Source: Ylistrum balloti (lineage: Eukaryota). Taken from it: 64,000 nucleotides of DNA. Under the pieces are notes generated by a model, which saw nothing but the letters and a program-made list of their open reading frames with translations, had not been told where the DNA came from and did no database searches. The position numbers and the translations under genes were made by a program. The stretch is from positions 930,001-994,000 of the forward strand of contig NW_026782259.1 of NCBI RefSeq assembly GCF_031769215.1, in the 5' to 3' direction. Positions 30,213 to 57,100 of the stretch are shown piece by piece (position 1 is the first letter of the stretch; each line of letters starts with the position of its first letter).

Positions 30213-31253
30213 CTATACAATATAAGATAATATGAATTTGCCTATTCCCCATATAGAACAATCGTTTTTATCCTTGCCGAACGTGGTTCGGCGATCCCAG
30301 TATTGTTGCACAGTACCTGGTGAAACATAATGTGTTATTATATGACATCGAGAAAACAGGTCACTAAACAACCAGTCGTAAACATAAATATTCATATTAT
30401 AAACAAAGTTATCTACATTCTTTACCGATAACCCAAGTTTATAAGCAACAATCCCTACATAAACATCTTCGTATTTGAATACTCTTGTATTTCTCATTTC
30501 ATCATATATTTTGCGGGCTGTATTTAACGTCATCACGTATCCCGGTCCATTGCAAAATGGTGGTAATATTTGAAAAGGGTATTCTTCGTAAGAAATTTGC
30601 CACTTGCTTGACTTCCTACACGGAAATGATATTTGGTTGCATGAACCAAGAATAGCATAATCTGGAACATAATTGGCATCCCTTTGAATTTTACTGAGAA
30701 TGTCTAGATCTAAATACACATCGTCATCGATTTTAAAAAAGTGCCTCGTTCCCTGACAATAATGTACGACCCAGTTGAAAGCAGCTATTGTTTTGTATGT
30801 TAAGTTATTGTAATCTTCATCGACATCCACCTGCAAGAGATCTCCATTATCGTTGTTTAGACTGACTCCTTCCTCTCTACCCACAACGAAGTACATACTA
30901 AAGTTGTATTTTATTTGCATCTCCCGATTTCCCCATGTCCTTCGAATGGCGTGCCGTGTCACAATATTGGACATTTTGCTTAAAACCATGATAACAATAT
31001 TTCTCGTAGAGTTTTTAGGACACTTCAAATTTGGAACAAGTGAAAATGGTATGGGTTTAAGGCTCTCCTGTTGGTAAGCAAACTTTAAAAGGTTTGGGAG
31101 GGTTAACGTTTGCTCATGAATGGCTTGGGAAAAGAACAACCACACCATCAGTACTGCTCCCACGAACATCACACCGCCGACTCTTCTCCTTGTCGGCCTT
31201 CTTACGGCCCTGCAATAGAAGACATAGCAGCCTTCTAAATTGTCTACAAGCAT
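30213..31253 (-). CDS. Beta-1,3-galactosyltransferase-like protein (glycosyltransferase family 31), single coding exon, type II membrane protein
   Basis: 346-aa ORF with an N-terminal hydrophobic anchor (MFVGAVLMVWLFF). GT31 motifs: RHAIRRTWG, DLLQVDVDEDYNNLTYKT, KIDDDVY (DxD), YPFQILPPFCNGPGYVM, EDVYVGI. The true start may be the ATG at 31169. Confidence 0.93.
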   Translation of the reverse strand: MLVDNLEGCYVFYCRAVRRPTRRRVGGVMFVGAVLMVWLFFSQAIHEQTLTLPNLLKFAYQQESLKPIPFSLVPNLKCPKNSTRNIVIMVLSKMSNIVTRHAIRRTWGNREMQIKYNFSMYFVVGREEGVSLNNDNGDLLQVDVDEDYNNLTYKTIAAFNWVVHYCQGTRHFFKIDDDVYLDLDILSKIQRDANYVPDYAILGSCNQISFPCRKSSKWQISYEEYPFQILPPFCNGPGYVMTLNTARKIYDEMRNTRVFKYEDVYVGIVAYKLGLSVKNVDNFVYNMNIYVYDWLFSDLFSRCHIITHYVSPGTVQQYWDRRTTFGKDKNDCSIWGIGKFILSYIV

Positions 31254-44689: not shown

Positions 44690-45277
44690 TTAACTTTCTG
44701 TACATCCATACTTTACTCGAGAAAAATAACAATCAAATCCAAGTGAGATGGTATTATCATACAGAACCCTGAATCGTGTTGGTAAGATCAAAAAATTAAA
44801 TAGCTGTGCTGGAGGCCATACAATCCATTCAGCCAGATACAGAATAGCACCTTTACTTGTAGTCTCCTCTTTTATTTCTTCCCAAGTCTTGTTTTCTAGT
44901 ATAGAAGTCGTTAGTAAAAACAAGGAGATGTAAATTGGAGAGCAGATCAACTGATCAACAATAACCTTTTTGAGTACAACTTTGATCGTTTTGCCGGGAA
45001 GCCATTTGTCCAAGAAAAGGTACCAGTAGTGGCAAAATGGTCCTATCACTAGTCCAGAGGCTGCCACATGTTTGCTGCGAGTCAGATTCATTGCCTTGGC
45101 TTCTTTTGTCCTGATCTGGTACCTCTGCTGAAGGAAGTCTCCAGTACATGATAATCCCACTGTTATACTGACATTAGTCACTAGCAAATATTTTTTGCCA
45201 AATAGTACTTTCCCACTGTCTGAGACAGCCTTCTGAACAGGCTTGGACAATTGCTTCAGCCATCTTAGGCCCAGCAT
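44690..45277 (-). CDS. MPV17L2: Mpv17-like protein 2 (Mpv17/PMP22 family membrane protein), single coding exon, about 195 aa
   Basis: LLVTN...LSCTGDFLQQ, SGLVIGPFCHYWYLFLDKWLPG, VLKKVIVDQLICSP, EWIVWPPAQLFNFLILPTRFRVLYDNTISLGFDCYFS. The ORF-track N-terminus (45430) reads through a pyrimidine-rich acceptor (AG at 45355-45354), so the start is placed at MLGLRWLK (45277). Candidate non-coding upstream exons end at GTAAGT donors near 46207 and 46734. Confidence 0.93.
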   Translation of the reverse strand: MLGLRWLKQLSKPVQKAVSDSGKVLFGKKYLLVTNVSITVGLSCTGDFLQQRYQIRTKEAKAMNLTRSKHVAASGLVIGPFCHYWYLFLDKWLPGKTIKVVLKKVIVDQLICSPIYISLFLLTTSILENKTWEEIKEETTSKGAILYLAEWIVWPPAQLFNFLILPTRFRVLYDNTISLGFDCYFSRVKYGCTES

Positions 45278-45639
45278 GTCTCTTGAGTTCACCAATGCAT
45301 TCAGTTGTCTATTGAAAAGAAATGCTGGAGAATGCTCTTTAAAAATCCATCTCCTGTAAGGAAATAAGAAGAAAATTGTTATAAAATTAAATAGGCAAAA
45401 TACAAGAGGCACAAAAGCCATAACAGTCATCTAGCTTCAAAAAATTTCAGCATGTAGAAGGGTTAATTTTTCTACTTTGAATGAAATCTTCAGACAACAA
45501 TCAACCCTAAAGTTGAATCAGTTACCTTTCTGAAGGCACAAACGCAGCTGGCTGAAAGCTTTTACATACCGATAGTTAAAGAATAACAACATTTTGTTCG
45601 CTACCTTTACTTAATATCCCTACCAATTTTTAGCTCAAA

Positions 45640-48108: not shown

Positions 48109-48293
48109 NNNNNNNNNNNNNNNNNNNNNNNNNNNNNNNNNNNNNNNNNNNNNNNNNNNNNNNNNNNNNNNNNNNNNNNNNNNNNNNNNNNNNNNNNNNN
48201 NNNNNNNNNNNNNNNNNNNNNNNNNNNNNNNNNNNNNNNNNNNNNNNNNNNNNNNNNNNNNNNNNNNNNNNNNNNNNNNNNNNNNNNNNNNNN
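48109..48293. other. Assembly gap (185 N)
   Basis: Run of N characters. Confidence 1.
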
Positions 48294-50233: not shown

Positions 50234-53200
50234 ATGATGCCCAGAATGCGAATGCCGATGAGAGCTCCACACCCAATGGGTCCTGGACCCCATGGCCCTG
50301 GAGGTCATCCAGGCGGTCCTCATGGTCCGCCAATGCCCCATCGTGCTCCTCACATCCCTCCTCATGGCCGTCCTGGACCACCAGGGCACATGGCTGGACC
50401 TCCACGCCAATCCATGCCTCCTCCTATTGGCCAAACATCTGTTGGTAGTGTCACAAATGACCCATCAACAGCTGGTGCCAGAGTGTTTGTGGGGAATCTC
50501 AACACAATAGCATTGTCAAAGGAAGAAGTTGAAGCAATCTTCAAGCGTTATGGGGCAGTGACTGGACTGTCAATGCACAAAGGCTACGCCTTCATCCAGT
50601 ATGCAAGACAAGCTGATGCTCGGAGGGCATGTATCAATGAAGATGGGAAAATGTATGCCAACCAGACCCTAGGTAAACAATGAACCTTACATTGTCAACA
50701 ATTTCAGAATTGTGAAAAAGCAGGTTCTGCCTTACTGGTTTGCAAAACAATATACTTCAATCATATTAAATTGCAAACATAAAACACATTGTAATGATAA
50801 AAATGCATCTGTGTTTAGGTAAAATTAAGCAAGATTCACATATATTTTCATTCTGAGCACTCTAAGCCTTGTATAATGTTTCTATGATAGAAGTGAAGTT
50901 TTTAGATGTTTATTCAAAGTTTAAGCAGTTGTGTAAATGATATATATACAAATGTATCTTATGCTTTTTATACTTTTACATAAACCTGGTCAGTTTTATC
51001 ATGTGTATATGAAAGACAACGAGTCTTTATTTGGTAATATTTATTGTGAAGTGACTGGTAATATTCCATTTCAGATATAAATATTGCATCAGAGCCAAAA
51101 CATCGGCAAACAACAGCTACAAATGCTGTTAAGAAGGCAACCACAAATTTTCAAAGGTATTCATTTGGAGACAGAATTTTAGTTTTGCAATGATTATAGA
51201 TACATATTTAAGAAGACTTTCGTGTAACAAGTTATAAGAATATCATACTTTTTTTTAATGCCCTTCTTAAGTAATTCCTTTTTTAATTTGAATGTAAGTA
51301 ATTGTTCTCTGATTTTTAGAAATGGTATTTTTCTCTTTTTTGTACTATATGTAAATTTTTATGATGGTATGAACAGTACTACAGCTAAATCTTCGGGAGT
51401 GAACCGAACGTTAAGTGGAGGAGGACCTCCAGCCAAGAAAATGAGGACAGATACACAGATTAGTGGCGGTATTAAGCGTACACTTGTCAGTCTGACATCT
51501 GGAGATATGGGCACTACAGCCAAGACTGGCCTCAACAAGAATTCAAATGCTGTATCTTCAAATGCCAGCAAGGTCGTGAGTAAGTAAATTCACAATGATT
51601 ATTTAAGTATGTACTTCACAGTTAAAAATACAGTGGACAGTCTAGTTTTAGTTCACAATGCGACCAATATTGATGAAGTGATCAGTAATCTGGGGTACCT
51701 ATTTGATATTTACTACCTTGGCTGACGAGTATTGACGGTCTATACTATGAGCTAAGATACTAATCTAATAATGATGTATCCTTACAATAATTACCAATAT
51801 GGTTGTGTAATTTTGACTTCGTGATTTTTCTATGCTGTTGGAGATTGAAATCTTTGCTTCAAAAGTTTTGTGTAATCACCATTTTCATTCACTTAACTTT
51901 GACTTGAGTGCTCAACATCCTAAAAATTTTCTGAAAGGTACTGACTTGAGTGCTCAACATCCTAAGAAATTTCTGAAAAGTACCGACTTGAGTACTCAAC
52001 GTCCTAAGAATTTTCTGAAAGGTACACTTGTAAGCCTATAGGATTGGTACATAAATGATACAAGAAGCGTGTAATTTATGTGGTAACTTTTCAACTTATC
52101 TTCTGCTCCTTTGTGTATTTTATAGTTGGAAAAGACGTACTGATCTGTGGTGTTTGTAAAAGTCAATTTGCCAGTCTTCACAGTCTGGCTCAACACAAGA
52201 AGACGCCGTGTCGTCTCAGGTTTTCTTGTATATGTAAAAATGCGCCACCTCCAGGTATGACAGCTATCATTTAATAACTAGTGTTGATAATGGTAGTTTT
52301 ATATATTAAGCTAATTGGTAGTACCTTACATTATTTCAATATGTACCTTAAAGGTGATTTCACAGACCATTGGTAATTATGAAATATAAAATAAGCTATT
52401 TTTTCCTTTATTACTATAATTGGTATTGTTTACTCCAATGTTTTGGACAGTTTAAAGGGATTGGTTAATATTTCTTTTACTGAATATGGTACCTATTTTC
52501 TACGTAAATCTTCAGTGTGAACATTTCCATTGTAAGACAACTACTGGAGGTAAAAAGATTTGATATTAGAGTATTAGGGAGTGAGGATCATAGGGTCAGT
52601 ATTTTCAGAAGGATGACTACCAGTAGACTGATATCCATTGTCCATCATTTTACAGAGAGTCCAGAACCAGCCATTTTGTTCTGTGCTCACTGTGATGCAC
52701 AGTTTGCAGCATGTTGGGATCTTGTTCTCCACGCACAGCAGGAACATAGTCTATCCATCTATAAGCAGGTAAGAACACAATTTTTTCTTTCTCATGAGGT
52801 GTTAAGAGGTCAAAGATCATTCAGAATTGATCTCTGTTGCAATATCATTTGAGAGGTGGTAAATGATTCTCTCTGAACAGTAATGTTGATTTCTTTTTAG
52901 ATAGCACCACACGAAATAAAAAAATATTTCTATTATCTATATACCATAGAAAAGTTGTAGATTAAATTTTTTCAGATTTGCAACAATTAAGTCGGATACT
53001 CTTAACCTTTGAAGACATGGCAAACAATTTAATTTAAACAAGTTATCTCACCGATCATGTACTACACAATATTGAAATTTGACTATTCAATTTTCATAAT
53101 TTCACCAAACAATTCCCATTCTGTGTCTTGAACTTGGAATGTACTCTGCTGTAAAATTACATAGTTGTTGTCAGTTGAAAAAATCCCCCAAATATACAGG

Positions 53201-54105
53201 AGCATACAGACAGCAGTCATTTGTTGTATGTTTTATGGTAGTTGGCCAGTTTCACCAACTACTATAAAACATACAACAACAAAAGACTGCTGTCTGTATG
53301 TTCCTATACCTGACTGCTTCAGACTTATTGCCTACAACTGAAATGTTCATAAGGTTGCTTTCAAAGTTTGTGGATGTTTACTGTTTATTGTTAAAGGATC
53401 ACAAAGTGATTAAGTACATATGTATTAACAAAGGAGAAATTTATGAAAATTGTGAGATTGATTATTTTTCAAAGTGTCCTGAATTGGATCTGATTGATTT
53501 TGTTTTCAGGAAGGAGAAGAAAACACAGAAGTAGTTGTTGAGGTGAGTGATAATAGTTATGATGTACTTTATATTAGCTACAGTTGGAACAATTGCTTGG
53601 AAATCAATGATGTTATTCATATATGAAATGTCAGATTGTTGTCTTACTTGTTGTTCACAGTCCACACTATGAGTACTTTAATAACATTGTACATTTAACT
53701 TGTAAATATAGGTTACATCCATATTTAATGGCTATCATCTTTCAGTTTGAATAATTGGCTGTTTATGTCAAAATTTCTTACAAGCAAATATTGACCACTC
53801 ATGTTTACTGCAAAAATATCTTAAGTCTGCCATGTGATGTTCAAAATGCCTTTTGCCTGTGGTCAGAGGAATTTTCAAATTAAAGAGCAAATTAAAGGAA
53901 AGGATTAAACTGATAAAGAACAATTTAATGACATACCATGGTGTGCCAAGATGTTAGTGGGGTTTGTTTTATAAATGACTGTACAACAAATTCATATATC
54001 AGTTAGATGAAAGGAATTGGATATGTTATTGAGAGTAATGAATTTTTTTTTCTGTTGCAGGAAGTGTTGGTTGCAGACGGAGAGGGAGAAGTGAATGGAG
54101 AGTGA
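50234..54105 (+). CDS. HNRNPC: hnRNP C/RALY-like RRM protein with a Pro/Gly/His-rich N-terminus, two zinc fingers (CCHC and C2H2, BCL11/ZFP64-like) and an acidic tail; 347 aa
   Basis: Exons 50234-50672, 51075-51156, 51377-51579, 52126-52254, 52656-52768, 53510-53542 and 54061-54105 total 1044 nt, with all phases consistent. The RRM RVFVGNLNTIALSKEEVEAIFKRYG..MHKGYAFIQY..ARRACINEDGKMYANQTLDINIASEPK closely follows hnRNP C/RALY. NLS-like PPAKKMR. The symbol denotes family likeness, not tested orthology. Confidence 0.9.
51901..52026. repeat. 42-bp tandem repeat (3 copies) in hnRNP C-like intron 3
   Basis: Unit GACTTGAGTGCTCAACATCCTAAAAATTTTCTGAAAGGTACT. Confidence 0.92.
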
Positions 54106-57100
54106 GAGGAGGACATGATGATCCCTCAGGGTGAGGAAGGCTTCACTGTTTATTGTCAAAACTTCCTTTTACAGTCCAGGCCAATGGCTGACACATGTGA
54201 CCTGAGGACTAAAACAAGGGGGATAATCAGCACCAGGGATCTGTTACCACACACCGTAGTAAATTGTTGCAATTTATTTTTCATTGTTTGATATGAACAG
54301 CTTGTTCAAGGTATCTGGTATCTATAAGTCAAAGTGTAATGTATATTTTGTATTGCATAATTACAACATTGTTATGTCGACACCCTTATTATGATCATGT
54401 TCACGTGTTAATAGGTATTTGATGTCTGTGCAGTTGAGAAGAGGTGAATTTATTTATGCTGTTTGTCAACTTTAAACTTAGTCATATATAAATTTAAAAT
54501 TAGCATTGTCATTTGAGACCTTTAATTGAAAATATCTTCGTCAGATCCATCCAATCATTATTCTGAAGTGTAAACTATGTTTTAATATATGTTAAATTCA
54601 ATGTGTTAATGCAATTTTTGAGAAATTTTAGAAGTTACACGTTTGATATCATGCCTTCGTGTAAGTCTGAAAGGAATTTGTTTTTATGTAATGCTAAGTT
54701 TGTGTTTGTACATTGAAATGTTAGAGCCGTTACCTTGAATGAAAATCATGAAGGTATATATGGCATTGTCATATATGAAAGCATTGGTGTGTTCATAGCT
54801 AGGGTGTATTAAGTGGATAAGTTGATGTGCATTTATCATATTGTTACTTTTGGTTTTAAAGTTTGTAAATGTTCATATCTCGCCTTGGAATCTTATTGTC
54901 TGTACATGTATATAGATGTTCATCTCTTACTATGGAATCCTGTCATCACCTGCCAAGAATAAATACAAATGTCATGTCTATCCTGAGATAATATTAGTTA
55001 TTGTATAAATCTGACCAATTATAAGAATTTTCATTCTGTATATATCATCAAAGTTGAATTTTGGTGAGCTATACAGTAAGTCTATTGTGTTCTGGAGGTC
55101 TTTTTATTATAACAAGTCCCGGATACAATTTGTTGATGGTAAGGTTAAATGCCTATTTATACACATGCACTAAATTAAAAATTGATATTTCATCTTTACC
55201 AATGATTAATTGATTTATAGTTGATTTTCTTGATTGATCGGTTATTATTCATAATTTCATTTCCCTGTGGATCAGTTATTCAATCTGAGTTACAACATAA
55301 TTAGTTCTCACATGATAAAACATGTTTGATTTTGTAGTAATACGTTGATACTGACTTTTCAAGCTTTTCTTTTATCTACAAAGAAATTGTTAGTACCCAG
55401 GTACATTCATTCAGTCTATTTAATAAGTTTATGGAAAGCTTCACACTATTTGAAAAACATTCTAAATTTTTGAAAATACTGTTTGAATAGCTTGAATTTT
55501 TGTATCAATTTTCAAAATATTTGAACTGTTTTGTACCCTTTGTTCAATAAATCTGTATCAGAGTTAATTTTGATTTATGTACTTGTTAACATATTTTTTT
55601 TTCTCAAATAAAATAACATCTAGGGACTATTATTTGTTTTTTCATCTCTTCTTTTAACATATGTCATGGACCATTTGAAGGTGAAATTGTTTAATTAATC
55701 TTTTTGACAAAGCATGTCTTTAAGTTATTTTTATTTTGGTCCTATAACTGGAAAATGAATTTCATTTGAAGAAGAGGTAAACTTTAAATGATTTTATAAT
55801 CACGAAACAAGTCTTTGTCTGCTATATTTTGTGCAGTAATCTTTTGATTGTCAAAGATCTTACAATTTCTCTTATGCTAAACACTGATGGTTATGACTCT
55901 AGAGAAGACATAATATCTTAAGTTATTGGATGGACAGTTGAAAAACTTCAACTTTCAGTTTTTTTAGAGTCAATTTAATCTATTTTCCACACAAGAAATT
56001 CTGCATATTGAGATGATTTTCAACCCACTGTAAATTCATTTAAAATAAGTTTTATGATAAAGTGAGATTGTCCCTGTTTCGTTTATTTAAAAAAAATCAT
56101 TCAAATAAGTGCTTGTAATTAACAGCAGATGCTTGCAGATCACACATGGTAATCATTTCATAGAAAACTTAAATTGCTAGATGGTTCCTTGAAAACATTA
56201 TTTTAGAAAATCTTAAAAACAGATAAAAAATTAATCTTTAGTAAAATCAATTTTCTCTTGTTTTTTTTTCAGACACCAAGTTTAGATACACTAAGAAAAA
56301 ATGAATACTGATTTTCATTAGCTTTCTGTTAAATTGTCAAATTCAACATTTCAATACCATTTTTTTTCTAAATTGTGAAGATATCAACTTAAATGAATCT
56401 CTTAAGTCTTGATGGAAGCTCTTGGTCAATTTGATGGAAATTTGGCTACTTGGACAGTTTATTGTAGGCTTTAACATAAGGTTCTTTTCTAGACTGCTTT
56501 TATGAAATAAGGCCCAAGTGTTCCTAACTTAAGTGGAAATCTAGTAAAGAAATTTTGCATATGAATCCTGGTGCACAGTATTATAATATGAAAGCTGGTT
56601 GTGGACTATTTCAAAATTTAATTTTCTCATAAAGAATAAGTGAAGCATTGCCATATTGTTTTGCAGGAAAGATTGTCATTTCAAACATTGTTAAAGAATT
56701 CATCAACATAAAGCATAGGTGAATATTTAACACCCAAGTCTTTAATCTTTAAAAGCATATTCCCAAGTATTTTTTACATAAACTATACTGATCATATGTC
56801 TTTTGACCAAGTATATACCAATACATGGCAGAGTAATGTTCACTATGTTGAGCTTAAACAATAAAGTGTATTATCAAAAGTCCAGAACAGATGATTTATT
56901 GGTAAAGATACAACAGTTAAAGTTTTACATCCACAATAAATTAGATTTTATTGTGTTTTTATAAAGATTGCTATTAAGATTTCTCCTGTATCTTGTGAAC
57001 CAGACTCGAAAAAAAACCAAAATGCTTTTTCAGCATTCTGATGGGTATGCTGTTAATCTTTAGAACAGTTATGTTTTTGTTCCACCACACAAGCAATAAA

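What the first reader, a model, noticed from the sequence alone, without database searches (positions are those of the whole stretch)
50234..54105. hnRNP C/RALY-type RRM joined to a BCL11-like zinc-finger pair in place of the leucine zipper
Seen in sequence: phase-consistent splicing links the hnRNP C-like RRM to exon 4 (DVLICGVCKSQFASLHSLAQHKKTPC, C-x2-C-x12-H-x4-C) and exon 5 (PAILFCAHCDAQFAACWDLVLHAQQEHSLSIY, C-x2-C-x12-H-x4-H), then a short acidic tail. No heptad leucine zipper is visible. Established knowledge: vertebrate hnRNP C has an RRM, basic region, leucine-zipper tetramerisation domain and acidic tail, and no zinc fingers. The second finger closely follows BCL11A ZnF1 (F..AW.L..HAQ..H.L.IY). 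The first is the CCHC type found at the N-terminus of BCL11 and ZFP64, and BCL11's CCHC finger mediates oligomerisation. Inference: this may be an invertebrate hnRNP C that oligomerises through a BCL11-type zinc module, or an RNA/chromatin bridging factor. I cannot confirm whether this architecture has already been described.
Basis: partly seen in the sequence, partly recalled or inferred. Interest (0 to 1): 0.8.

Follow-up and report, generated by a model that had tools for sequence, protein, structure and literature searches.

The report
Scallop hnRNP C-like gene with zinc fingers
This is a real, spliced scallop gene, the only hnRNP C/RALY-type gene found in its genome, and like its relatives across molluscs, arthropods, flatworms and nematodes it carries two BCL11-like zinc fingers where chordate hnRNP C has its leucine zipper; databases already hold the family, but no paper found here describes it.

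Summary
Seven GT..AG exons (50234-54105, + strand) give a 347-aa protein identical to the public model LOC132553929 of Ylistrum balloti. One spliced contig from a related species joins the RRM exons to both finger exons at the predicted junctions.

The N-terminal half is a true hnRNP C/RALY RRM (E=2.7e-28 to human hnRNP C) and is the only such locus found in this genome. The C-terminal half holds a CCHC finger and an atypical C2H2 finger. Between two scallop species this module is as conserved as the RRM (96% against 71% for the linker).

The architecture is not a scallop oddity. 243 of the 395 proteins retrieved carry both fingers. They come from molluscs, a brachiopod, arthropods including Drosophila species, flatworms and nematodes. 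Vertebrate and tunicate relatives have the leucine zipper instead, and no retrieved protein has both.

The second finger is specifically BCL11-ZF1-like. The first resembles BCL11 ZF0 more loosely (x12 spacing rather than x14, below the Pfam threshold).

My best reading is a nuclear U-tract RNA binder whose fingers mediate protein-protein contacts, probably self-association. That function is inferred and was not shown here; the one complex prediction gave no verdict.

Novelty is moderate: the family is catalogued, but its finger module is not described in the literature I searched.

The parts
50234..50672 (+). Exon 1: start codon, Pro/Gly/His-rich N-terminus (aa 1-72) and most of the RRM (Pfam RRM_1 at aa 84-146, nt 50483-50671)
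   Evidence: RRM_1 E=3.5e-10; human hnRNP C RRM 2mxy, E=2.7e-28. The X2 contig covers 50227-50670.
51075..51156 (+). Exon 2: end of the RRM with the hnRNP C-type 'LDINIASEPK' extension, and the start of the basic Ser/Thr-rich linker
   Evidence: joint 50670->51073, GT..AG; alignment to hnRNP C runs through this motif.
51377..51579 (+). Exon 3: basic linker with an NLS-like 'PPAKKMR'. The linker aa 151-240 has 14 K+R, 3 D+E and 27 S+T.
   Evidence: joints 51153->51375 and 51577->52126; family consensus P-x-K-R-x-R.
52126..52254 (+). Exon 4: CCHC finger (aa 249-270, nt 52146-52211), preceded by the invariant D-x-L-I-C-G strand and followed by the R-L-R-F-x-C-x-C motif
   Evidence: D, L, C, G in 42/42 and I in 41/42 members. 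The X2 contig covers 52126-52251.
52656..52768 (+). Exon 5: atypical C2H2 finger (aa 294-315, nt 52682-52747) of the BCL11-ZF1 type, with Trp at helix position +2 and an I-Y after the last His
   Evidence: W in 40/42. The X2 contig covers 52653-52769.
53510..53542 (+). Exon 6: start of the acidic tail
   Evidence: AG/GT, in frame. The orthologue P0151 has the same tail. The 91 unplaced letters of the X2 contig fit exons 6 and 7.
54061..54105 (+). Exon 7 coding part: acidic tail and TGA stop (54103-54105)
54106..54370 (+). 3' UTR, at least this far
   Evidence: The X2 contig lies on 54121-54188 and 54274-54370.

Best explanation
This is the scallop's single hnRNP C/RALY-family gene, and it is a real seven-exon gene (identity confidence about 0.95). 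The protein has five parts: a low-complexity Pro-rich N-terminus, one hnRNP C-type RRM with its LDINxxEPK extension, a basic Ser/Thr-rich linker with an NLS-like P-x-K-K/R-x-R, two isolated zinc fingers, and a short acidic tail. It belongs to a protostome-wide family in which the finger pair occupies the position that the basic-zipper/leucine-zipper tetramerisation region occupies in tunicate and vertebrate hnRNP C/RALY. The likely mechanism is inferred, with about 0.4 confidence for the self-association part. The RRM binds U-rich pre-mRNA in the nucleus as in hnRNP C. The two fingers do not read DNA. They serve as protein-protein interaction modules, most probably for self-association, and so do the job of the chordate zipper. 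The second finger is homologous to BCL11 ZF1. The first belongs to the same broad class as BCL11 ZF0. Both BCL11A fingers are reported to be needed for its dimer or tetramer formation.
For: Shown here. The gene model equals the public protein. A spliced contig joins the RRM and finger exons. The RRM matches human hnRNP C and RALY at E=2.7e-28 to 1.3e-27, while the next RRM type scores 1e-7. Only one such RRM locus is found in the 648-Mb genome. Both fingers are present in 243 of 395 retrieved proteins, from Mollusca, Brachiopoda, Arthropoda, Platyhelminthes and Nematoda. All eight zinc ligands are invariant, as is D-x-L-(I)-C-G before finger 1, and Trp sits at +2 of finger 2 in 40/42 members. 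Between two scallop species the finger module is 96% identical and the RRM 95%, against 71% for the linker. A zipper motif is found only in vertebrate and tunicate-type relatives and never together with fingers. AlphaFold2 gives two confident beta-beta-alpha fingers (pLDDT above 90) joined by a floppy linker. The helix positions that read DNA in canonical fingers (-1, +2, +3, +6) hold S/D/G/E, H/Q/D, S/E/K and Q/E/D in finger 1, and S/T/N, W, D/S/E and Q/V/H in finger 2. Basic residues are nearly absent at these positions, and there is no TGEKP linker. Finger 2 is the closest relative of BCL11 ZF1 in the genome, and finger 1 aligns to BCL11 ZF0 with a 2-residue gap (hhalign probability 93.6%). 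[quoted passage not shown] Both fingers have hydrophobic residues where DNA-reading fingers have polar ones (PMC12006351, citing Zheng et al. 2024).
Against: No experiment or prediction here shows self-association. The one dimer prediction scored 0.20 against a mark of 0.32, and the tool says this is no evidence either way. Finger 1 differs from BCL11 ZF0 in spacing (x12 against x14). It also lacks ZF0's five-residue hydrophobic stretch at the helix start, which forms the tetramer core, and it falls below the Pfam PF25491 threshold. Sequence, profile and fold searches of the PDB gave only generic C2H2 matches. No RNA data from this species itself were found.
Confidence: 0.5

Rival explanations
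1. The fingers are a docking module for other proteins, not for self. For example, they could co-assemble with the BCL11 homologue or other proteins that carry ZF0/ZF1-type or FOG-type fingers, so that the protein bridges nascent RNA and chromatin repressors.
For: Finger 2 is the only BCL11-ZF1-like finger in the genome besides BCL11's own. BCL11A and BCL11B hetero-multimerise through ZF0 (PMC12006351). CCHC fingers of this class (FOG/ZFPM, PF25445) are known protein binders, and 4 of 42 members touch that model. The residues at DNA-contact positions are almost all non-basic.
Against: No partner was tested. The module replaces a self-association domain in the same position. The spacing of finger 1 differs from ZF0, which argues against a matching interface.
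Confidence: 0.22
2. The fingers are extra nucleic-acid binding units (RNA, or single- or double-stranded DNA) that extend or tune the RRM's binding, as in other RRM-plus-finger proteins such as Matrin-3 or ZNF638.
For: C2H2 fingers can bind RNA. There are weak touches to zf-met and zf-C2H2_jaz (E=0.03 to 0.004). The language-model look-alikes below the family itself are Matrin-3, ZNF638 and RBM20 (scores 0.80-0.83, leads only). The linker before the fingers is basic.
Against: Basic residues are nearly absent at the helix contact positions of either finger across 42 members (only Lys at +3 of finger 1, in 8). Trp and hydrophobic residues are conserved there instead. The fingers are isolated, with a 12-62 aa spacer and no canonical linker. 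The atlas scores are in the range that shuffled proteins also reach.
Confidence: 0.15
3. The finger exons belong to a gene-model or assembly artefact: a fusion of two neighbouring genes, or an isoform that is rarely made.
For: No RNA run of this species was found. The label of run X2 as RNA is a guess by the tool.
Against: One contig of a related species carries exons 1 to 5 with the introns removed at GT..AG sites, plus UTRs. Many family members come from 1-3 kb transcript-sized contigs with the whole open reading frame. The same order of domains is seen in five phyla. The module is under strong constraint.
Confidence: 0.03

Closest known systems
Vertebrate hnRNP C1/C2, RALY and RALYL
   Same: They share a single N-terminal RRM of the same subtype (about 55-60% identity; E=2.7e-28 to 2mxy), the LDINxAxEPK extension, a basic linker with a P-x-K-R-x-R type NLS, and an acidic C-terminal tail. 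This is the only such gene found in the scallop genome, so it is the co-orthologue.
   Different: It has no basic-zipper or leucine-zipper tetramerisation region. Two zinc fingers sit in that position. The N-terminus is a long Pro/Gly/His-rich stretch.
BCL11A/BCL11B N-terminal atypical fingers ZF0 (CCHC) and ZF1 (C2H2)
   Same: A CCHC finger is followed by an isolated C2H2 finger, in the same order. Finger 2 shares E-P-x4-C, S-A-W at helix positions -1 to +2, H-x-Q-x2-H and the trailing I-Y with scallop and human BCL11 ZF1. Finger 1 shares D-L-L-x-C-G-x-C and H-K-x3-C with ZF0. Both BCL11A fingers carry hydrophobic residues at DNA-contact positions and are implicated in oligomerisation.
   Different: Finger 1 has x12 spacing, not x14, and lacks the hydrophobic helix start of ZF0. 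It scores 17.9 bits on PF25491 against a cut-off of 27. The spacer between fingers is about 20 aa here, against roughly 100 aa in BCL11A (my recollection of the human sequence). There are no DNA-binding arrays ZF2-3 or ZF4-6 and no N-terminal NuRD-binding peptide. The protein is RNA-binding.
Drosophila CG42458, listed as the fly orthologue of hnRNP C
   Same: PMC5570092 (Table 1) pairs hnRNP C with CG42458. Drosophila species proteins of about 700 aa are members of this finger-bearing family. The gene is a TDP-43 toxicity modifier and a neuron-subtype marker, but it has not been characterised biochemically.
   Different: I did not retrieve the D. melanogaster sequence itself, so its membership is inferred from congeners. 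The fly proteins are twice as long because of Gln/His-rich insertions.
Other CCHC fingers of the class 'x-C-G-x-C ... H-K-x3-C' at the N-termini of multi-finger transcription factors (Pfam PF25491 CCHC_BCL-11A, PF25445 CCHC_ZFPM2)
   Same: They have the same C-x2-C-x12-H-x4-C spacing and the same C-G-x-C and H-K signature. In the scallop genome three such exons (C504:995361, C167:131168, C402:994752) score higher against the family profile than BCL11 ZF0 does.
   Different: Those genes carry C2H2 DNA-binding arrays and no RRM. None has a ZF1-like second finger.

Membership tests
hnRNP C / RALY family | Single N-terminal RRM of the hnRNP C subtype | tested here: met
   2mxy (hnRNP C) E=2.7e-28, 1wf2 E=4.2e-28, 1wf1 (RALY) E=1.3e-27. 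The next RRM type (RBM14) scores 1e-7. RRM_1 at 40 bits.
hnRNP C / RALY family | Post-RRM extension L-D-I-N-x-A-x-E-P-K | tested here: met
   LDINIASEPK at aa 146-155, aligned to LDINLAAEPK of human hnRNP C.
hnRNP C / RALY family | Basic linker with an NLS of the P-x-K-R-x-R type | tested here: met
   PPAKKMR in exon 3. The family consensus is P-x-K-R-x-R with a nearly invariant Lys. The linker has 14 K+R against 3 D+E. Nuclear import itself was not tested.
hnRNP C / RALY family | Basic-zipper / leucine-zipper (CLZ) tetramerisation domain | tested here: not met
   No CLZ motif and no run of three heptads in any of the finger-bearing proteins. The motif hits only vertebrate and tunicate-type members. 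A vertebrate CLZ query found nothing in the scallop genome, but there was no positive control.
hnRNP C / RALY family | Acidic C-terminal tail | tested here: met
   10 D/E in the last 31 residues. The tail is much shorter than in vertebrates.
BCL11 (CTIP) family | ZF0: CCHC finger with C-x2-C-x14-H-x4-C, matching PF25491 above 27 bits | tested here: not met
   The spacing here is x12. PF25491 scores 17.9 bits over profile positions 1-12 only. The control, scallop BCL11 ZF0, has x14 and scores 56.6 bits. Only 4 of 42 family members touch PF25491 at E<0.01.
BCL11 (CTIP) family | ZF1: isolated atypical C2H2 with E-P lead-in, S-A-W at the helix start, and H-x-Q-x2-H-x3-I-Y | tested here: met
   In the genome-wide profile search, BCL11 ZF1 is the top non-self hit at 39.8 bits (E=3e-7), while every hit outside the CCHC-exon class scores 26.8 bits or less. 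hhalign probability is 98.8% over 37 columns. The single-sequence search gives 42% identity.
BCL11 (CTIP) family | Tandem DNA-binding arrays (ZF2-3, ZF4-6) and an N-terminal NuRD-binding peptide | tested here: not met
   There are only two fingers in the 347 aa, and the N-terminus is MMPRMRMP.... The scallop BCL11 locus does carry the ZF2-3 array. The definition of the NuRD peptide is from my own knowledge.
Protostome RRM-CCHC-C2H2 family (annotated 'hnRNP C-like', 'RALY-like' or 'uncharacterized') | hnRNP C-type RRM, then D-x-L-I-C-G CCHC finger, then W-containing C2H2 finger, in that order | tested here: met
   the invariant columns include all eight zinc ligands. The scallop protein is 27-72% identical to the other 41 aligned members across the module.

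The most novel reading that the evidence does not exclude
The finger pair is an ancient homologue of the BCL11 ZF0-ZF1 oligomerisation module. It would be the protostome (possibly ancestral bilaterian) way of assembling hnRNP C particles, with the leucine zipper a chordate replacement. Two unrelated devices would then serve the same 'molecular ruler' oligomer. In a further version, the fingers let the RNA-binding protein co-assemble with BCL11-type repressors, linking nascent RNA to chromatin silencing.
Probability: 0.3. Interest if true: 0.7.

Novelty: new variant of a known kind. Interest (0 to 1): 0.5.

Why it matters
The function of hnRNP C as a length-measuring, U-tract-binding particle rests on its zipper-mediated tetramer. 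If the protostome orthologues, including an uncharacterised fly gene that modifies TDP-43 toxicity, assemble through zinc fingers related to those shown in 2024 to tetramerise BCL11A, three things follow. First, domain replacement in a core RNA-packaging protein could be studied in genetic model organisms. Second, the BCL11 ZF0/ZF1 module would gain a second, independent family in which to study its interface. Third, current annotation, which records only the RRM for most members, would need correcting. If the fingers do something else, the family is still a conserved and unstudied RRM-finger protein present in most protostome phyla examined.

Tried and rejected
- Complex prediction of two copies of the finger module with four Zn: score 0.20 against a mark of 0.32, and the controls were not run. 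The tool's verdict is no support and no evidence against. My alignment was not used.
- PDB sequence search with the module and with the 42-member profile: only generic C2H2 matches (CTCF, PRDM9, ZBTB). The BCL11A rows are its DNA-binding fingers, not ZF0 or ZF1.
- Foldseek of the AlphaFold2 model against the PDB: nothing at E<=0.001. This is expected for two fingers on a floppy linker (pTM 0.39).
- Pfam on exon 5 alone: no family at E<=1.
- RNA runs: two searches found no run on record as RNA for this species. X1 is DNA collinear with the introns.
- The 5' UTR exon implied by 164 loose letters of the X2 contig could not be placed in the window.
- A vertebrate leucine-zipper query against the scallop genome found nothing, but there was no positive control, so this is not evidence of absence.
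- Rfam on the whole window: no family.
- I could not establish whether ambulacrarians, cephalochordates, cnidarians or annelids have fingers or a zipper.
- D. melanogaster CG42458 itself was not retrieved.
- Earlier-findings look-ups returned nothing.
Full report
**Observation.** The region 50234-54105 (+ strand) contains seven open segments bounded by AG acceptors and GT donors: 50234-50672, 51075-51156, 51377-51579, 52126-52254, 52656-52768, 53510-53542 and 54061-54105. Spliced together they give 1044 nt, or 347 codons, ending in TGA. The CCHC finger is C-x2-C-x12-H-x4-C at aa 249-270 in exon 4. The C2H2 finger is C-x2-C-x12-H-x4-H at aa 294-315 in exon 5.

**Identity of the gene.** The translated model is letter for letter a protein already in public collections. 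It is P0001, 'uncharacterized protein LOC132553929 [Ylistrum balloti]', a scallop. The window is contig C402:930001-994000 of a 648-Mb assembly.

**Transcript evidence.**
- No run on record as RNA from this species was found.
- Run X1 is genomic DNA collinear with the introns.
- Run X2 comes from a related organism, about 90% identical in the exons. It holds one 1763-nt contig that lies on exon 1, exon 2, exon 3, exon 4 and exon 5 in turn.
- That contig skips exactly the predicted introns (GT..AG, within 1-3 nt of alignment slack).
- It then carries 91 letters where exons 6 and 7 predict about 93, and continues into the 3' UTR to 54370.
- Twelve of the thirteen listed exon-1 differences in X2 fall on third codon positions (my count; only part of the differences are listed).
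- A second transcript-sized record, P0151 (347 aa, from a 1921-nt contig), has the same architecture and the same acidic tail.
- Identity between the two scallop proteins is 95% in the RRM, 96% in the finger module and 96% in the tail, but 71% in the linker and 78% in the N-terminus.
- The finger exons are therefore part of the same mRNA as the RRM and are under constraint as strong as the RRM. A gene-fusion artefact is very unlikely.

**The N-terminal half.** Pfam sees RRM_1 at aa 84-146.
- Against all solved structures the best matches are human hnRNP C (2mxy E=2.7e-28; 1wf2 E=4.2e-28) and RALY (1wf1 E=1.3e-27). The next RRM type is twenty orders of magnitude worse.
- The alignment runs through the hnRNP C-specific LDINxAxEPK extension.
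- A basic, Ser/Thr-rich linker follows (14 K+R, 3 D+E, 27 S+T in 90 aa). It contains PPAKKMR, which matches a family-wide P-x-K-R-x-R motif.
- A six-frame search of the whole genome with the RRM finds only this locus at E<=0.001.
- This is therefore the scallop's single hnRNP C/RALY-type gene.

**The finger module.**
- An alignment of 42 diverse members (A1) has every zinc ligand invariant. Also invariant are Asp, Leu, Cys and Gly of a D-x-L-I-C-G strand before finger 1 (Ile in 41/42). Trp sits at helix position +2 of finger 2 in 40/42 members, and I/L-Y/F follows the last His.
- Most members (31-32 of 42) also have L-R-F-x-C-x-C just after finger 1.
- AlphaFold2 with this alignment gives two confident beta-beta-alpha fingers (pLDDT above 90) and a low-confidence linker (pTM 0.39). 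The fingers are therefore independent beads, not one globule.
- Basic residues are nearly absent at the positions that read DNA bases in canonical fingers (-1, +2, +3, +6); the only one among the common residues is Lys at +3 of finger 1, in 8 of 42 members. The spacer between fingers is 12-62 aa (median 26), with no TGEKP-type linker.
- This argues against a DNA-reading array.

**Relation to BCL11.** I searched the whole scallop genome in six frames with the A1 profile.
- For finger 2, the best non-self match is the first coding finger of the scallop BCL11 homologue (C703:95917-96024, 39.8 bits, E=3e-7). That open frame continues into the unmistakable BCL11 ZF2-3 array. Apart from the CCHC exons that match finger 1, all other hits score 26.8 bits or less.
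- hhalign of A1 against that exon gives probability 98.8% over 37 columns, including the E-P lead-in, S-A-W, and H-x-Q-x2-H-x3-I-Y.
- Both introns that precede the finger are phase 1, but they lie three codons apart. This is suggestive only.
- For finger 1, three other CCHC exons (C504, C167 and C402:994752) score higher (35-30 bits) than the BCL11 ZF0 exon (C703:147996-148163, 26.8 bits).
- hhalign aligns finger 1 to ZF0 with probability 93.6%, but needs a 2-residue gap. BCL11 ZF0 has 14 residues between the second Cys and the His in human and in scallop. This family has 12.
- On Pfam PF25491 (CCHC_BCL-11A, cut-off 27 bits), exon 4 scores 17.9 bits over the first 12 profile positions only. 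The scallop BCL11 ZF0 scores 56.6 bits. Only 4 of 42 members touch the model.
The statement about the first finger holds only at the level of a broader class of N-terminal CCHC fingers.
- BCL11 and this gene are the only loci found in this genome that pair a CCHC finger of this class with a ZF1-type finger, and they do so in the same order. That makes common descent of the pair plausible, but it is not proven.

**Distribution.**
- A full HMMER scan of 1.84 billion representatives with the RRM returned the protein itself. Among the best 150 hits were 31 clusters with both fingers.
- Word-index searches with P0001 and with a 29-member profile added many more.
- In all, 243 of the 395 proteins fetched carry both fingers.
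- Named sources include bivalves, gastropods, a cephalopod, a chiton, the brachiopod Lingula, insects of many orders (Tribolium, Nasonia, aphids, mosquitoes, Drosophila species at about 700 aa), crustaceans, ticks, spiders, a scorpion, a sea spider, a millipede, flukes, tapeworms and nematodes.
- Their names are 'uncharacterized', 'RRM domain-containing', 'heterogeneous nuclear ribonucleoprotein C(-like)' or 'RNA-binding protein Raly(-like)'.
- The precomputed Pfam column shows only RRM_1 for nearly all of them.
- A zipper motif written from vertebrate RALY/hnRNP C hits only two groups: the vertebrate representatives, and a group of marine transcripts whose one named relative is from the tunicate Clavelina lepadiformis. 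By eye, that protein has a related heptad stretch that the strict pattern did not match.
- No protein has both a zipper and fingers.
- I could not determine the state in ambulacrarians, cephalochordates, annelids or cnidarians.

**Mechanism.**
- Shown: a single-copy, spliced and conserved gene; an hnRNP C-type RRM; two constrained, isolated, non-canonical fingers in the place of the chordate zipper; and specific similarity of finger 2 to BCL11 ZF1.
- From the literature: BCL11A ZF0 crystallises as a tetramer. Its dimer forms through strand beta1, and its tetramer core is the hydrophobic start of the helix. [quoted passage not shown] Both fingers are needed for BCL11A oligomers and stability (PMC12006351 citing Zheng et al., Science 2024; also bioRxiv 10.1101/2024.12.10.627839).
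- Inferred: the invariant D-x-L-I-C-G strand and the conserved Trp-containing helix face are interaction surfaces, and the module replaces the zipper as the assembly device.
- The weak points are the different spacing and less hydrophobic helix of finger 1, and the absence of any positive prediction.
- Heterotypic docking and nucleic-acid binding remain live rivals.

**What is known.**
- PMC5570092 lists CG42458 as the fly orthologue of hnRNP C (30% identity) and finds it to be a strong suppressor of TDP-43 eye toxicity.
- Other papers use CG42458 as a marker of R8 photoreceptors and of TmY8, T4/T5 and Mt1 neurons.
- None of the papers found describes its zinc fingers or relates them to BCL11.
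- I did not retrieve the D. melanogaster protein itself, so its membership rests on congeners in the family and on that table.
- Automated annotation has noticed the co-occurrence in places. One aphid entry is named 'Zinc finger C2H2-type, RNA recognition motif domain', and a few sandfly entries carry PF00096.

**Verdict.** The finger-for-zipper exchange across protostomes and chordates, and the BCL11-ZF1 identity of the second finger, appear not to be described. They give a clear, testable hypothesis, which is why I rate the finding as of moderate interest.

Noticed in passing
window 53198-53305 (intron 5 of the gene): A near-perfect hairpin with a stem of about 46 bp. The RNA fold is -72.6 kcal/mol, z = -14 against shuffles. 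It is single copy in the 648-Mb genome and matches no Rfam family. It could be a hairpin-RNA or miRNA-like precursor, or a young inverted duplication.
   Followed up: partly
window 51900-52025 (intron 3): Three tandem copies of a 42-nt unit, 90-93% identical.
   Followed up: no
G000:C402:994690-1008950 (starts about 690 bp past the window end; L012, L020, L021): About 10.6 kb downstream on the same strand a multi-C2H2 zinc-finger gene begins. Its first coding exon carries a CCHC finger with the same C-x2-C-x12-H-x4-C spacing (30.1 bits on the family profile). A 21-nt-period coding repeat lies at L020:7504-8454. Whether this neighbourhood relates to the origin of the finger exons is unknown.
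   Followed up: partly
window 30213-31253 (-) and 44690-45430 (-): Two intronless open frames: a galactosyltransferase (PF01762, E=8e-40) and an Mpv17/PMP22 family protein (PF04117, E=7.6e-20).
   Followed up: partly
window 48109-48293: A run of 185 N (assembly gap or masked). I left it untouched.
   Followed up: no
P0064, P0390-P0395 (P0393 = Clavelina lepadiformis): Tunicate-type hnRNP C relatives carry a leucine-zipper-like motif close to the vertebrate one and no fingers. The zipper therefore predates vertebrates.
   Followed up: partly
P0026 (356 aa, JGI transcript): A family member in which the CCHC finger has lost its cysteines (…NDVLVCEMKLHG…) and the C-terminus is replaced by unrelated sequence. 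It is either a degenerate lineage or a chimeric transcript.
   Followed up: no
P0219, P0220 (cluster of P0130): Two short 'Mycobacterium' proteins (44 and 32 aa) fall in the same 90%-identity cluster as the Aedes albopictus family member. This probably reflects eukaryotic contamination in bacterial assemblies.
   Followed up: no
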